The position numbers and the translations under genes were made by a program. A stretch of DNA of 63,056 nt, counting the filler, from Octopus bimaculoides (lineage: Eukaryota), in assembly GCF_001194135.2 (NCBI RefSeq). It is 5 parts of 5 records of this genome, joined end to end, with 100 filler letters (N's around TTAATTAATTAA, not from the genome) between each part and the next. Parts side by side here need not be neighbours in the genome. Positions count along the whole stretch, not along the records: positions 28,043 to 54,394 come from NC_069007.1; 4 more parts are not named here. One strand, given 5' to 3'. Position 1 is the first letter of the stretch; the number at the start of each line of letters is the position of its first letter. Of the stretch, positions 30,553 through 41,736 are shown piece by piece. The notes beneath the pieces were generated by a model that did not search any database, was not told where the DNA came from, and saw nothing but the letters and a program-made list of their open reading frames with translations.

Positions 30553-30804
30553 ATATGCATATAATAATTAATATATGAACATTTATTTATGTGTGTGTAT
30601 GCATGTATGTAAACAAAATATCATAACAAAACTTATAATGATCACAGAAAACAAAATGATAACTGATGCTATAATTTCTACAAGTATAGTCTTAAAATGT
30701 AAGAAATGGACAAGAATAATGTTTTGTTTGTAAATATCACTAATAAAAGTTCTATATATAAAGAACAGAGTTGAAGAAATGATTCATATGGTTGAATACT
30801 TTAC

Positions 30805-30858
30805 CTGTTGTAAGAGGTGTAACTGGCTGTGAAGTTACAACGAAGGAAGAAGGATATT
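30805..30858 (-). CDS. Micro-exon A (54 nt, phase 1-1): (E)YPSSFVVTSQPVTPLTT
   Basis: Acceptor ttccacattaacactttcag and donor ACAG|gtaaag. Confidence 0.85.
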
Positions 30859-31454
30859 CTGAAAGTGTTAATGTGGAAAGAGTAAGATTTCAGTTAAGTT
30901 GATGTCTTTGTGTTTTTAACTAAAATAAAGATGTGTTTATATGATAATAATTGATGAATTGTAATTGAAAAGAAATCACAGAAATAAATCATATTTAATT
31001 TTTACATTTCTATATGTTACAGTTTCTGTGAAAACATATTGCAAAGATATGAACATGTAGTGGTGCGAAATTATGGTCGCCATTAAGGAAGTACAATCTA
31101 CGCATGCACAAAGGACTTGCCTTTCCGGAAGCCCCTCGAGTGCGCATGCATAGTAAAACCAGTACTTAAAGCACTTCGCGCACTTTCTAACCCTCTCTTT
31201 AGCGCAATGCTTTCGACGTAACAACTACTTGCTCCTTTGGCATGCCTCAACGAAGCTCTTAATATCCAGATGCCGATTACAAGTTAACCAGCGGCTACCA
31301 GGCTGAATGACACAGGATTTGTAAGACCCAAGCATCACCAAAAATAAAACTTATTTTTATTATGTTGTTAATTGTTCTACTGTTTCTTAATATATAATTT
31401 TGTTGAAAGCTGATAGAGAGAGACTAACATCTCTATTGCAAATCTCTTTTTCTC

Positions 31455-31967
31455 TCTTTTTCTTGTTTCAGTCATTTGACTGTAGCCATGCTGGAGCACC
31501 GCCTTTAGTCGAGCAAANNNNNNNNNNNNNNNNNNNNNNNNNNNNNNNNNNNNNNNNNNNNNNNNNNNNNNNNNNNNNNNNNNNNNNNNNNNNNNNNNNN
31601 NNNNNNNNNNNNNNNNNNNNNNNNNNNNNNNNNNNNNNNNCCCCGAGACTTATTCTTTGTAAGCCTAGTACTTATTCTATCGGTCTCTTTTGCCAAACCG
31701 CTAAGTGATGAGGACATAAACACACCAGCATCGGTTGTCAAGCAATGCTAGGGGGACAAACACAAACACACAAACATACACACACACATATATATACATA
31801 TATACGACGGGCTTCTTTCAGTTTCCGTCTACCAAATCCGCTCACAAGGCTTTGGTCAGCCCGAGGCTATAGTTGAAGACACTTGCCCAAGGTGCCATGC
31901 AGTGGGACTGAACCCGGAACCATGTGGTTGGTAAGCAAGCTACTTACCACACAGCCACTCCTGCGCC
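31455..31967 (-). mobile_element. SINE family A, full length, gapped
   Basis: Reverse complement of 30118-30552. Confidence 0.9.
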
Positions 31968-32464
31968 TATATCAACCTTTTACAACTATCAACCTTTTAC
32001 AAACATATCTCTACGCACATGCGCACATGCACAACCAATTAGTGAATAACATAGTCATGAGTGGATTGAAGTTCATTGCTAAATGAAGAAGAGATCTGGG
32101 AGGTGTCACAACATTTCTGATAAAACAAGCAGGACGATTTGTAGGAAAGTTTTTGAACATTGATGTGTAACTGTTAGAAAATTTGAAAATTTATGGATAT
32201 GTTGCTATATTGCATAAGAAAAACATGGAAAGTCTTCTGATGTAATACTATGTCAAAATAGAGACACTGCAATAAGATCTGACATACTGAATCCTGTCAA
32301 ACCATCCAGCTCATGTCAAACCATCCATGCTAACATGGAAAGTGCACATGAAATGGCGATGATGATGATCATCATCATCATGACACATGTACAGACAAAC
32401 AGGTTTTCTGCAATTTCATCAATCAAATTCATACAAGACATTGGTTAGCTTCAGTTATGTTGGC

Positions 32465-38792: not shown

Positions 38793-39027
38793 CTGAAGCT
38801 GTTAATGTGGAAAAAGTAAAATGTTGTTAAATAAGTTGATGTCTTTGTTTTTTTTTAACAGAAATAAGCATGTTTATATGGTAGTACTTCATGGATAGTA
38901 GCTGAAGAGAAATCTCTGGATTGAAGTATATTCAATGTTATATTCAATGTTATATTCAATGTTATATTCAATGTTATATTTTTCTTTATATTATATCCAA
39001 TTATTTTTTTTTTCTTAGTGCTAAAAT

Positions 39028-39330
39028 CTTTACTCTTTTACTTGTTTCAGTCATTTGACTGCGGCCATGCTGGAGCACCGCCTTTAGTCGAGCAAATCAA
39101 CCCCAGGACTTATTCTTTGGAAGCCTAGTACTTATTCTATCGGTCTCTTTGTGCCGAACCGCTAAGTTACGGGGACGTAAACACACCAGCATTGGTTGTC
39201 AAGTGATGTTGGGGGGACAAACACAGACACACAAACACACACATATATATACATATATACGACGGGCTTCTTTCAGTTTCCGTCTACCAAATGCACTCAC
39301 AAGGCTTTGGACGGCCCGAGGCTACAGTAG
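39028..39330 (-). mobile_element. SINE family A, truncated by a gap
   Basis: Reverse complement of the family A 3' two-thirds. Confidence 0.85.
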
Positions 39331-40617
39331 NNNNNNNNNNNNNNNNNNNNNNNNNNNNNNNNNNNNNNNNNNNNNNNNNNNNNNNNNNNNNNNNNNNNNN
39401 NNNNNNNNNNNNNNNNNNNNNNNNNNNNNNNNNNNNNNNNNNNNNNNNNNNNNNNNNNNNNNNNNNNNNNNNNNNNNNNNNNNNNNNNNNNNNNNNNNNN
39501 NNNNNNNNNNNNNNNNNNNNNNNNNNNNNNNNNNNNNNNNNNNNNNNNNNNNNNNNNNNNNNNNNNNNNNNNNNNNNNNNNNNNNNNNNNNNNNNNNNNN
39601 NNNNNNNNNNNNNNNNNNNNNNNNNNNNNNNNNNNNNNNNNNNNNNNNNNNNNNNNNNNNNNNNNNNNNNNNNNNNNNNNNNNNNNNNNNNNNNNNNNNN
39701 NNNNNNNNNNNNNNNNNNNNNNNNNNNNNNNNNNNNNNNNNNNNNNNNNNNNNNNNNNNNNNNNNNNNNNNNNNNNNNNNNNNNNNNNNNNNNNNNNNNN
39801 NNNNNNNNNNNNNNNNNNNNNNNNGTAGTAGCAAATATTCGAACAAGGCGGCGAGCTGGCAGAAACGTTACCCCACCGGGCAAAATGCTTAGCAGTATTT
39901 CGTCTGCTATTACTTTCTGAGTTCAAATTCCGCTGAGGTCAACTTTGCCTTTCGTCTTTTCGGGGTCGATAAATTAAGTACCAGTTATGCACTGTGGTCG
40001 ATGTAATCGACTTAATCCCTTTGTCTGTCCTTTCTATGTTTAGCCCCTTGTGGGCTATAAAGAAATAAGAAGCTTGTTTTCTAACCAGATGATTCCGGGT
40101 TCAGTCCCACTGCATGGCACCTTGGGCAAGTGTTTTCTACTAAAGCCTTGAATGGATTTGGTAGATGGAAACTGAAAGAAGCCCATCGTATATGTGTGTG
40201 TGTGTGTTTGTGTCTGTGTTTGTCAGCTCACCATCGTTTGGTGTGTTTACATGCCCGTAACTTAGCAGTTTCCTTCTACCAAATCCACTCACAAGGCTTT
40301 GGTCAGTCCGAGGCTATAGTAGATGACACTTGCCAAAGGTGCCATGTAGTGGGACTGAACCCAGAACCATGTGGTTGGTAAGCAAGCTACTTACCACACA
40401 GCCACTCCTGCGCCTATGTATATAAATAAAATACCATTGAAAAGATCTGAACAATCACAGATAACCAAAATAGTAACTGATAACAATTTCTATAAGTATA
40501 GTCTTAAAAGCTAAGAAATAGGCAGAAATAATCTGTTTTGGTTTTAAAGAGAACTTATTCAAGTTCTATATGTAAAGAAAATGTTTGAAGAAATGATTCA
40601 AATGGTTAACTACTTAC

Positions 40618-40677
40618 CTGTTGAATGAGGTGTAACTGGTTGTGAAGTTCCAATGGAAGAAGAAGGTTGTGTTGAAC
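40618..40677 (-). CDS. Micro-exon F (60 nt, phase 1-1): (G)STQPSSSIGTSQPVTPHST
   Basis: Acceptor ttccttccacctctatag and donor ACAG|gtaagtag. Paralogous to exons A-E. Confidence 0.85.
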
Positions 40678-41736
40678 CTATAGAGGTGGAAGGAATAAAA
40701 TGATGTTAAATAAGTTTTTGCCTTTGTCTTTTTTTTTAACAAAAAGAAACATGTTTATAAGATAGTATTTAATGAATAGTAATTGAAGAGAAATCTGAGA
40801 ATTGAAGTAAATACGATTTTATATTTTTCCTAGAGTCTGTAAAAAGATATAAAAAATATGAACATGCACTCATGCATGCATACACACACTCTCAAAATTT
40901 AACAGGTAGAATTTTATATTATCAGGTCATTAAGAATGAAATGTCCAATTTTGAACTGAAAGTTTATTTTAAAGTTATCTCAGCAAAAAGCAATGCAGTT
41001 AAACAAAGTATGCACCTAAATTATCAACACAATTTTGCCATTTTATTGGTAGCTTATTTATGCTGGCAGTGAAGAATTCTGGAGAGCAAGAGGTGATGGA
41101 ATCACGAAAGGCTGTTTTCATCATTAAGGATGGGGTTACCACCCAGAAACTTGAGTTTGTGTATATCATGTAAGGCTAGATATGGGAGCGATGACCTCCC
41201 CTCACAAATACTAATCAGACACAGAATGTGTGTCGTTAGCCAGCAGGAAGAGATGTCTTCCTGGGGCTATAAATGTCAGTAGCACTGTCCTGTACAGGAC
41301 GCCACACTTGGCTGGCAATTATATGTTACAATTCCATATTGCTACTGTTTACATCTCGCTCAGAGATTTAATATATCTATGCATATAAATTTGTCATGGA
41401 CTATTCTTTCTTGTCTTGGGATTCATGGTCAAATAGCTGGGTGGAATTGTGTGAAAAATTACACAGAAGTGTAAAATGATCTGGTGGTGTTGCTAGGGTT
41501 TGTATTTTTTCATAGCTCCCATGGTTACCGAGATAATCTATTATAGTAATACTCTTGTGTTTATGAATGAGAAAGGAAGGGGTGATAGATGAATAAAGAA
41601 GGAAGGGATGATGTCATACTTGGTAGTGGGATGATGAAAATTGTACCCTGAAAAAATAAATCAAACAGCGTTTCAACTGTGTGAATATATGTGTGTGTAT
41701 GTAAAAGGGGGTTATGTGAATGTGTGTGTGTGCGTG

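What the first reader, a model, noticed from the sequence alone, without database searches (positions are those of the whole stretch)
30590..40860. Mucin repeat expands by tandem duplication of an exon-plus-intron cassette
Seen: exons A-F each sit in a paralogous cassette of about 400-500 bp (about 30590-31040, 33660-34200, 35090-35670, 37680-38330, 38640-38990, 40420-40850). The intronic flanks are still alignable (ctacaagt..tagtcttaaa...aagaaatgg..caagaataat before, aaataagttgatgtctttg...gaagagaaatc after). Every copy is phase 1-1 with length divisible by 3, so adding, deleting or skipping a cassette keeps the frame. Known: most vertebrate mucin VNTRs lie within one large exon, while multi-exon repeats are known for chicken Muc13 and Schistosoma SmPoMuc polymorphic mucins. 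Inference: the locus can tune linker length and glycan load both by unequal crossing-over and by combinatorial splicing, making it a candidate cephalopod polymorphic-mucin system.
Basis: partly seen in the sequence, partly recalled or inferred. Interest (0 to 1): 0.8.

Follow-up and report, generated by a model that had tools for sequence, protein, structure and literature searches.

The report
Duplicated mini-exons build octopus mucin-like linker
Six diverged tandem copies of a small exon with its flanking intron encode a serine/threonine/proline-rich spacer in a highly expressed, tissue-restricted octopus gene; the array looks old and fixed, and only one of the six exons is optional, so it is an ordinary case of exon duplication, not a hypervariable mucin system.

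Summary
Six paralogous cassettes of 0.45-0.65 kb lie at the stated places, and the gene is on the minus strand. Each carries a 54, 57 or 60 nt exon with GT..AG splice sites confirmed by RNA contigs. All are phase 1-1. RNA junctions cross every assembly gap in the finding, so order, orientation and frame hold.

The seven mini-exons G-F-E-D-C-B-A encode a 126-residue linker that is 57% Ser/Thr/Pro. It sits between a Cys-bounded domain (exons J+I) and the start of a second copy (exon L). The first domain has no Pfam match but models as a discoidin-type beta-sandwich.

Tandem duplication of an exon-plus-intron unit is right. "Combinatorial splicing" is not: an apparent second exon skip was a contig laid on the wrong paralogue. 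Junction depths balance with only exon E optional, included in about one third of transcripts in one sample and absent from contigs in three others.

No copy-number variation was seen. Cassettes D and E are present in all 8-12 DNA samples, and related species share words with them. Intron flanks are only 68-91% identical and interrupted by transposons, so the array is old, unlike the homogenised SmPoMuc repeats. This is a new member of a known kind, of modest interest.

The parts
30585..31039 (-). Cassette A. Exon A is 30805-30858 (54 nt, phase 1-1, YPSSFVVTSQPVTPLTT).
   Evidence: Alignment and BLAST. The B->A joint 30858->33885 and the A->L loose end are.
33663..34219 (-). Cassette B. Exon B is 33885-33938 (54 nt).
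   Evidence: B->A joint. The C->B contig has depth 3362 (record 2 and its loose end).
35110..35673 (-). Cassette C. Exon C is 35334-35387 (54 nt). The larger duplicated unit 34256-35816 is shared with D.
   Evidence: 92% identity to D over the unit. D->C joint 35387->37930 with depth 3517.
37657..38320 (-). Cassette D. Exon D is 37930-37983 (54 nt). A repeat element is inserted at 38020-38250. The larger unit is 37421-38629.
   Evidence: Joints E->D (depth 1115) and F->D (depth 2267). An inverted copy of the inserted element lies at 48701-48851 (I22).
38640..38990 (-). Cassette E, truncated on its gene-downstream side. Exon E is 38742-38798 (57 nt) and is optional.
   Evidence: the E-specific depth of 2377.6 is the sum 1284 + 1087.5 + 6.1. 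No contig lies on E in X25, X26 or X3.
40416..40826 (-). Cassette F. Exon F is 40618-40677 (60 nt).
   Evidence: The G->F junction appears as loose ends at 40679 and 42958.
42961..43002 (-). Mini-exon G (42 nt, phase 1-1, SSTAVPYSSSIQT). It is S/T/P-rich, but its flanks are not alignable with cassettes A-F.
   Evidence: A G-like mini-exon lies in O. vulgaris at L001 21246-21284.
45425..45560 (-). Exon I (136 nt, phase 0 to 1), the C-terminal half of discoidin-like domain 1.
   Evidence: Joint 45560->48892 with depth 3511. Homology to P0001.
48892..49154 (-). Exon J (263 nt, phase 1 to 0), the N-terminal half of discoidin-like domain 1.
53445..53480 (-). Mini-exon K (36 nt, phase 1-1, PSVSAAGVTPS), upstream of domain 1. 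The gene's 5' end lies beyond the piece.
   Evidence: The loose end behind 49156 resembles K, with 4 mismatches. The O. vulgaris counterpart is at L001 10031-10066.
29412..29680 (-). Exon L (269 nt, phase 1 to 0), the N-terminal part of a second, diverged discoidin-like domain. The rest of that domain was not found in the piece.
   Evidence: The A->L loose end TTTACCATTTCACACGATTTTT matches 29659-29680. L aligns to the domain family and to the O. vulgaris J exons by tblastn, E 8e-5.
31518..31640 (.). Assembly gap inside one SINE copy in the A-B intron. Its true length is probably only a few bases.
   Evidence: The flanks continue the same repeat, as in the intact copy at 39085-39120. The gap is spanned by the B->A joint.
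32738..33306 (.). Assembly gap at the centre of a head-to-head pair of repeat copies in the A-B intron.
   Evidence: Inverted repeats I11 and I18. The gap is spanned by the B->A joint.
39331..39824 (.). Assembly gap in the E-F intron, between transposon fragments.
   Evidence: The gap is spanned by the F->E and F->D joints.

Best explanation
This is a fixed, multi-exon, mucin-like spacer of a modular extracellular-type protein.

Origin: an ancestral symmetric (phase 1-1) mini-exon with about 200 nt of intron on each side was copied in tandem several times, most likely by unequal crossing-over. A, E and F are the older copies. B, C and D are a younger subfamily that shares a 7-nt deletion just upstream of the acceptor.

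Product: together with the unrelated mini-exon G, the copies encode about 126 residues of 18-20-residue Ser/Thr/Pro-rich units with the invariant core TSQPVT. This is presumably an O-glycosylated, extended linker. It separates a discoidin-fold domain (exons J+I) from a second, diverged copy (exon L onward).

Splicing: because every unit is in phase, each added copy lengthened the linker by 18-20 residues without breaking the frame. Today five of the six cassette exons are spliced constitutively. Exon E uses a new AG 6 nt upstream, preceded by a poorer pyrimidine tract, and is included in only about a third of transcripts.

Shown: the cassettes, splice sites, frame, exon order, optional E, the predicted fold of J+I and restricted high expression.

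Inferred: the duplication mechanism, glycosylation, the spacer function, the I->G junction and the weak-acceptor cause of E skipping.
For: Paralogy:
- Exon and flanks are paralogous in all six copies.
- Exons are 81-94% identical and flanks 68-91%.
- The 7-nt segment TTAACAC / TTAACAG / TCTATAG is present in A, E and F and absent in B, C and D.

Splicing in X1:
- Junction depths balance: J->I 3511, F->E 1087, F->D 2267, E->D 1115, D->C 3517, C->B 3362, B->A 4068.
- No contig lies on exon E in X25, X26 or X3, although those runs hold exon L fully and show some depth in the bins holding exons C and F.

Frame and composition: one open frame runs from K to L, and the linker is 57% S/T/P.

Domain:
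- Relatives of J+I occur in O. vulgaris, O. sinensis, Patella ('mucin-2-like') and Macrostomum.
- The AlphaFold model has pLDDT 86.5. Its best Foldseek matches are neuropilin b1/b2 and factor VIII C2.

Expression: depth over exon A is 6637 in X1 against 2-11 in X2-X4.

Fixation: cassette D words are at 0.96 in 12 DNA runs. Cassette E words are at 0.85-1.00 in 8 DNA samples. Related organisms B and C share 11-22% of the words.
Against: - The I->G junction was never seen directly.
- A scaffold gap (43396-43495) lies in that intron. The O. vulgaris locus is collinear with the window only up to that gap and has no G..A or L within the next 10 kb.
- Quantities come from assembler contig depths of a single deep sample (X1).
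- That sample carries minor variants at 25-35%, similar to E inclusion. E may therefore be allele-linked rather than alternatively spliced.
- The 5' and 3' ends of the gene lie outside the piece, so secretion is not shown.
- Gains in copy number and rare isoforms were not testable.
Confidence: 0.78

Rival explanations
1. The array is a polymorphic-mucin system whose length is actively tuned by unequal crossing-over between cassettes and by combinatorial exon skipping, giving many isoforms per population or individual.
For: The symmetric in-phase exons and alignable flanks would permit it. One exon (E) is indeed variably included. X1 carries sequence variants at 25-35%. O. vulgaris has a different module arrangement at the related locus.
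Against: Only one skip type is seen, and the other apparent one was a contig laid on the wrong paralogue. Junction depths balance with A, B, C, D and F constitutive. D and E are present in all sampled DNA runs. Flanks are 68-91% identical and interrupted by SINE and other repeat insertions. That is poor substrate for frequent unequal exchange and shows no homogenisation.
Confidence: 0.1
2. Exon E variation is structural or allelic, not regulated splicing. One haplotype either lacks a usable E (cassette deleted or splice site mutated) or always includes it.
For: E inclusion (about 32%) is close to the minor-variant fraction in the same run (25-35%). The B->A junction is split into two contigs that sum to 4068; a 2945/1122 split is inferred from the matching depth of the 35387->38742 contig, not reported by the tool. 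Seven non-reference DNA samples consistently lack 4 of 27 E-cassette words.
Against: E-cassette words are present at 0.85-1.00 in 8 DNA samples, so E is not commonly deleted. At the variant sites in exon J the reference-like allele is the major one, whereas E, which is present in the reference, is the minor form.
Confidence: 0.15
3. The cassettes are copies of a dispersed transposable element that happens to be exonised, not a locally duplicated exon.
For: The region is full of SINE-type and other dispersed repeats.
Against: All six copies are in one orientation, in order, within one gene. All keep the same frame and the core peptide TSQPVT. Exons are more conserved than flanks. There are no terminal repeats and no further copy elsewhere in the 26-kb piece.
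Confidence: 0.03
4. Assembly artefact: the copies are haplotypes or collapsed reads wrongly placed in tandem around the gaps.
For: Three gaps lie inside the array.
Against: The copies differ by 9-32% in their flanks, far more than alleles would. RNA junctions chain F-E-D-C-B-A in the assembled order and cross all the gaps. Independent DNA runs hold the D and E cassette words.
Confidence: 0.02

Closest known systems
Schistosoma mansoni polymorphic mucins (SmPoMuc; PMC2576457)
   Same: A short exon encoding a Ser/Thr/Pro-rich unit is repeated in tandem together with its flanking introns, as genomic repeats of about 1 kb. The units are in frame, so copy number sets repeat length.
   Different: SmPoMuc repeats are more than 93-94% identical (concerted evolution). 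There are up to 20 per gene, in a multigene family with hypervariable transcripts. Here there are six copies with flanks 68-91% identical and transposon insertions. They form one array, are present in all sampled DNA, and are constitutive except for E.
Vertebrate mucins with a PTS VNTR in one large exon (for example PMC13345508, abstract)
   Same: A Ser/Thr/Pro-rich repeated peptide, presumed to be O-glycosylated.
   Different: In those genes the VNTR sits in a single large exon and spans hundreds to thousands of residues with copy-number polymorphism. Here there are 126 residues in seven mini-exons that act as an inter-domain linker.
Spiralian proteins with modules of a discoidin-like domain plus a PTS linker: Patella vulgata 'mucin-2-like' XP_055959230 cluster, O. 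vulgaris CAI9741633.1, and possibly the Macrostomum glue protein Mlig-ap2 (PMC6410801)
   Same: The same Cys-bounded domain of about 125 residues, followed by S/T/P-rich linkers. The Macrostomum hit, with a 221-residue period, is the Mlig-ap2 repeat found in adhesive footprints.
   Different: In those proteins the whole domain-plus-linker module is reiterated, whereas here only the linker exon is multiplied. Similarity to a single Mlig-ap2 unit is weak: 31 bits by BLASTP and 4% probability by hhalign. That relation is a lead, not a result.
Classical symmetric-exon repeat proteins: 54-bp collagen exons, titin PEVK exons, tropoelastin (from general knowledge, not tested here)
   Same: Short in-phase exons were multiplied by tandem duplication to lengthen a non-globular segment. 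Some of these exons are optionally spliced.
   Different: The peptide chemistry differs, and there is no sequence relation.
Amphibian glue protein PRIT-Dg (PMC11237159)
   Same: Folded binding domains are separated by imperfect 18-residue repeats that carry predicted O-glycosylation sites.
   Different: The domains are unrelated (IgGFc-binding). The exon structure of its repeats was not checked.

Membership tests
Mucin / mucin-domain glycoprotein | Tandemly repeated Ser/Thr/Pro-rich sequence | tested here: met
   The linker is 126 residues, 57% S+T+P, made of seven units of 14-20 residues.
Mucin / mucin-domain glycoprotein | Dense O-glycosylation of the repeat | not testable with these tools
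   This needs glycoproteomics or lectin staining.
Mucin / mucin-domain glycoprotein | Secreted or membrane-anchored (signal peptide, TM or GPI) | not testable with these tools
   The 5' end (upstream of exon K) and the 3' end (downstream of exon L) lie outside the piece.
Mucin / mucin-domain glycoprotein | A large PTS domain that dominates the protein, usually in one exon | tested here: not met
   The linker is 126 residues in seven exons, placed beside folded domains.
SmPoMuc-type polymorphic mucin system | Exon plus flanking intron repeated in tandem | tested here: met
SmPoMuc-type polymorphic mucin system | Near-identical repeats kept homogeneous by concerted evolution (more than 93%) | tested here: not met
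   Flanks are 68-91% identical and exons 81-94%. Transposon insertions lie inside and between the units.
SmPoMuc-type polymorphic mucin system | Repeat number differs between individuals or transcripts | tested here: inconclusive
   Cassettes D and E are present in all sampled DNA runs. Only exon E varies in RNA. Copy gains and long isoforms were not testable.
SmPoMuc-type polymorphic mucin system | Multigene family of such loci | not tested
   No whole-genome search of the organism was available.
Discoidin (F5/8 type C) domain | Sequence match to the family profile (Pfam PF00754) | tested here: not met
   No Pfam hit for the window protein or its relatives. No PDB sequence hit.
Discoidin (F5/8 type C) domain | Beta-sandwich fold of FVIII C2 / neuropilin b1 type | tested here: met
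   The AF2 model has pLDDT 86.5 and pTM 0.82. The top 20 Foldseek hits are neuropilin b1/b2 and FVIII C2, with E 2.5e-5 to 5e-4 and query-normalised TM-score about 0.6.
Discoidin (F5/8 type C) domain | Cys near both ends of the domain (disulfide clasp) | tested here: met
   Cys is at residue 4 and at residue 128 of the 133, and is conserved in relatives that cover those positions. The bond itself was not tested.

The most novel reading that the evidence does not exclude
The gene encodes a cephalopod secreted adhesive or mucus protein that belongs to one ancient spiralian family with the flatworm temporary-glue protein Mlig-ap2 and limpet 'mucin-2-like' proteins. In that reading, linker length between lectin-like discoidin domains is adjusted in a lineage- or allele-specific way by adding cassettes or skipping them (exon E).
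Probability: 0.12. Interest if true: 0.6.

Novelty: new member of a known kind. Interest (0 to 1): 0.3.

Why it matters
This is a clean, RNA-verified example of how a symmetric mini-exon and its introns multiply to lengthen a glycosylated spacer. It lies in a cephalopod gene that matched no protein in the collections searched.

It also exposes a domain family without a Pfam model. The family has a discoidin-type predicted fold and is combined with PTS linkers in molluscs, and possibly in a flatworm glue protein. That could guide work on cephalopod mucus or adhesion.

As a mechanism it adds nothing new. Exon-cassette duplication and optional symmetric exons are textbook, and the data argue against a hypervariable system.

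Tried and rejected
1. First reading: two skip types (F->D and E->C), hence combinatorial splicing. I rejected E->C. Exon A's first 31 nt in the sense direction (the letters next to the joint) are identical to exon C's. Exon B's last 23 nt before its donor differ from exon E's by one letter. The contig depth (2945) fits as one of the two contigs that make up B->A (4068 in total). The E-specific depth is fully explained without it.

2. Replicating the splice graph in X25, X26, X27 and X3 over 6.6 kb: the exon joints were swamped by repeat-derived joints, so the call was uninformative.

4. Protein searches with exon L alone and with linker + L found nothing. Pfam found nothing for any exon or for the relatives.

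5. Exon M, the rest of domain 2: the open frames at 28513-29120 were inspected by eye. None fits phase 0 and the domain pattern, so exon M probably lies beyond the edge of the piece.

6. Homology to Mlig-ap2: the whole-protein E of 5e-37 is inflated by 24 near-identical repeats. One unit gives 31 bits, and hhalign gives 4% probability. I kept it only as a lead.

7. tRNA scan for the SINE heads: nothing found.

8. Mini-exons G and K were tested for membership of the cassette family: no flank similarity.
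Full report
**1. What is in the sequence**

Reading 30000-41500 and the repeat scan (families D3, D5, D8, D9) show six direct copies of one unit. The 88-nt cores start at 30801, 33881, 35330, 37926, 38738 and 40614.

MAFFT aligns all six across the core and several hundred bases on both sides. 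BLAST of the C unit against the piece gives 88% identity over 566 nt to B, 92% over 364 nt to D, 83% over 260 nt to E, 80% over 472 nt to A and 78% over 418 nt to F.

The sense strand is the minus strand: each core reads ...YAG | exon | GTAAR.

- C and D share a longer unit, 34256-35816 against 37421-38629. It is interrupted in C by an insertion at 34353-34798 and in D by a 231-nt element at 38020-38250.
- E is truncated on its gene-downstream side.
- Between the cassettes lie SINE-type repeats, other dispersed repeats and the three gaps.

**2. The exons are real and the gaps are harmless**

RNA contigs of run X1 laid on the window give junctions with GT..AG ends on the minus strand:

| Junction | Window places |
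|---|---|
| D->C | 35387/37930 |
| E->D | 37983/38742 |
| F->D | 37983/40618 |
| F->E | 38798/40618 |
| B->A | 30858/33885 (also weakly in X2 and X3) |
| C->B | contig with loose end ...ACAACAAAGGAAGAAGGATATT |
| G->F | loose ends at 40679 and 42958 |
| A->L | loose end equals 29659-29680 |
| J->I | 45560/48892 |

- The exon sizes are G 42, F 60, E 57 and D, C, B, A 54 nt each.
- B->A crosses the gaps at 31518-31640 and 32738-33306. F->E and F->D cross 39331-39824. Order, orientation and frame are therefore continuous across every gap named in the finding.
- The first gap sits inside a single SINE copy and is probably only a few bases long (compare 39085-39120).
- The second gap is the centre of a head-to-head repeat pair (I11 and I18).

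**3. Frame and product**

Concatenating K-J-I-G-F-E-D-C-B-A-L gives one open frame with no stop. All cassette exons are phase 1-1.

The frame is not arbitrary:
- J+I (133 residues) has a 75%-identical relative in Octopus vulgaris, and more distant ones in O. sinensis, Patella vulgata and Macrostomum lignano.
- L aligns to the N-terminal 90 residues of the same domain and matches the O. vulgaris J exons by tblastn at E 8e-5.

The linker between the two domains is 126 residues and 57% S+T+P. Its units look like EYPSSFVVTSQPVTPQTT.

The domain has no Pfam or PDB sequence match. With an 8-sequence alignment AlphaFold2 gives a confident beta-sandwich (pLDDT 86.5, pTM 0.82). Its best PDB matches are discoidin domains: neuropilin b1/b2, factor VIII C2 and retinoschisin, with E 2.5e-5 and query-normalised TM-score about 0.6.

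The gene is therefore modular: mini-exon K, then discoidin-like domain 1, then the PTS linker, then discoidin-like domain 2 and onward. Both gene ends lie outside the piece.

**4. Splicing: a correction to my first reading**

One search also listed a joint 35387->38742, apparently E->C with D skipped. Together with F->D this looked like combinatorial splicing. It is an artefact of laying contigs on only part of the array:
- Exon A's first 31 nt in the sense direction (the letters next to the joint) equal exon C's.
- Exon B's last 23 nt before its donor differ from exon E's by one letter.
- The contig's depth (2945) fits as one of the two contigs that sum to the B->A depth of 4067.6.
- On the E-specific bases the depth of 2377.6 is exactly 1284 + 1087.5 + 6.1. 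That is one exon contig, the F->E contig and a rare unspliced contig.

With that removed, the junction depths in X1 balance:

| Junction | Depth in X1 |
|---|---|
| J->I | 3511 |
| F->E | 1087 |
| F->D | 2267 |
| E->D | 1115 |
| D->C | 3517 |
| C->B | 3362 |
| B->A | 4068 |

- Only exon E is optional, at about 31-37% inclusion. A, B, C, D and F are constitutive.
- In X25, X26 and X3 no contig lies on exon E. Those runs hold exon L fully and show some depth in the bins that hold exons C and F. A 229-nt X3 contig that contains F does not contain E.
- Raw reads of X23 show E->D four times, from one start.
- Balanced depths also leave no room for a constitutive hidden exon inside the gaps.

A likely cause of E skipping can be read from the alignment. 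A, E and F retain a 7-nt segment (TTAACAC / TTAACAG / TCTATAG) that B, C and D have lost. In E and F it ends in AG and is used as the acceptor, 6 nt upstream of the ancestral one. This explains the 57 and 60 nt exons; E also lost 3 nt. In E this AG follows ...CCACATTAAC, a poorer pyrimidine tract than the ...CATTTCAG of B, C and D. This cause is an inference.

**5. History and stability**

- Pairwise identities are 81-94% for exons and 68-91% for intron flanks. Exons are consistently better conserved than flanks.
- B, C and D are the closest relatives: C-D about 91-92%, B-C about 88-91%, and they share the 7-nt deletion. They are adjacent, as expected from local tandem duplication. A, E and F are older.
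- Divergence, unit-specific insertions and transposons between units show that the array is not being homogenised.

In public DNA runs of the same organism:
- Words of cassette D are found at 0.96 in all 12 listed runs.
- Words of cassette E are found at 1.00 or 0.85 in eight samples.
- The lower E values in other libraries also occur in libraries of the reference sample itself, so they reflect assembly and not absence.
- Two related organisms hold 11-22% of E words, and one holds 12% of D words. This is what about 5% divergence would leave, so these cassettes predate those splits.

I found no evidence of copy-number polymorphism.

**6. Comparison with O. vulgaris**

The locus of the closest annotated relative (L001) has this order: K, J1, I1, a G-like 42-nt mini-exon (SSPTPYLGSSPTG), J2, I2.

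- There the whole domain is duplicated, and a G-type mini-exon follows exon I. This supports the I->G link in the window.
- The intron after I2 is orthologous to the window's I->G intron (87-94%), but only up to the window's scaffold gap at 43396-43495. Beyond that, L001 has microsatellites and SINEs, and no G, A-F or L within 10 kb.
- Either the lineages differ structurally here, or one assembly is misjoined.
- The I->G junction was never displayed in my RNA calls. It rests on equal depth, same strand and order, compatible phase, and the O. vulgaris I1-G'-J2 arrangement. I put it at about 0.85.

**7. Expression**

- Depth over exon A is 6637 in X1 against 2-11 in X2-X4.
- Exon L words are complete in four RNA runs, partial in five, and absent in many others of the same organism.
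- The gene is therefore strongly tissue- or condition-restricted. Run identities are coded, so the tissue is unknown.

**8. What it is like**

The nearest described genomic architecture is SmPoMuc. There a 27-bp exon and its introns form 1-kb tandem genomic repeats, with more than 93-94% identity, up to 20 copies, a multigene family and extreme transcript polymorphism (PMC2576457). The window shares the architecture but fails the homogeneity test and, as far as tested, the polymorphism test.

Vertebrate mucins keep their VNTR in one large exon (PMC13345508 abstract).

At the protein level the closest relatives are spiralian proteins made of a discoidin-like domain plus PTS modules (Patella 'mucin-2-like').

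The Macrostomum hit has a 221-residue period. Its sequence and footprint peptides appear in the supplement of the Mlig-ap2 paper (PMC6410801). However, one unit matches the octopus domain only weakly, so this remains a lead.

**9. Verdict**

This is a new member of a known kind: ancient tandem duplication of a symmetric exon-plus-intron cassette building a mucin-like linker, mostly constitutive, with one optional exon. Interest is modest at 0.3. A higher value would need proof of adhesive function or of real inter-individual variation.

Noticed in passing
window 48892-49154 plus 45425-45560 (minus strand); also 29412-29680: A Cys-bounded domain of about 125-133 residues with no Pfam model. It is predicted with confidence to have a discoidin-type fold. 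Relatives occur in Octopus, in Patella ('mucin-2-like', 4007 aa) and possibly as the 221-residue repeat of the flatworm glue protein Mlig-ap2. It may be an undescribed spiralian domain family.
   Followed up: partly
L001 14984-15247, 19764-19901, 21246-21284, 21535-21798, 22581-22718: In O. vulgaris the whole two-exon domain (J, I) is duplicated in tandem, with a G-like PTS mini-exon between the copies. The annotated model (CAI9741633.1) starts inside an intron and fuses parts of both copies. It looks like a mis-annotation.
   Followed up: partly
window 43396-43495 versus L001 about 24464: Collinearity with O. vulgaris ends exactly at this 100-N scaffold gap. Either a lineage-specific rearrangement or a scaffold misjoin lies between exon I and exon G.
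   Followed up: partly
window 49156 (loose end in X1) versus 53445-53480: The exon joined upstream of J in X1 resembles K but differs at 4 of 30 letters (two contigs, agreement 0.85). This suggests either alleles or a second K-like mini-exon outside the piece.
   Followed up: no
window 48946, 48956, 49125, 45549: Coding variants at about 25-35% of depth in RNA run X1, so not 50%. Possible causes are pooled animals, allelic imbalance or a near-identical paralogue.
   Followed up: no
window 34353-34798 and about 42170-42470: Insertions with inverted ends that carry internal telomere-like (TTAGGG)n/(CCCTAA)n tracts. The first splits the C unit relative to D. They look like a MITE family with telomeric-repeat cores.
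   Followed up: no
window 38020-38250 and 48701-48851: A 231-nt element is inserted in cassette D just upstream of exon D's acceptor. An inverted 71%-similar copy lies in the J-I intron. Both are covered by abundant RNA contigs from elsewhere in the genome.
   Followed up: no
window 30104-30560, 31448-31970, 36370-36660, 39022-39330, 40066-40420, 45887-46073, 51625-52020, 54070-54310: At least eight copies or fragments of one SINE-like family in both orientations. Most of them carry a TA/GT-rich microsatellite tract. ARAGORN finds no tRNA head. These copies are the main cause of the assembly gaps.
   Followed up: partly
window 43500-45100 (+ strand): Decayed open frames (for example ...GKALSASGITVEVLKISGG... 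and ...GVILSDWCSSIIFSCYKGKGDALD...) that resemble the N-terminal part of a non-LTR retrotransposon reverse transcriptase. This is from memory and was not run against Pfam. They lie in the I-G intron.
   Followed up: no
window 38925-38975: A short tandem repeat (TATTCAATGT)n lies in the intron just upstream of exon E. It may account for the 4 of 27 E-cassette words missing in all non-reference DNA samples.
   Followed up: no
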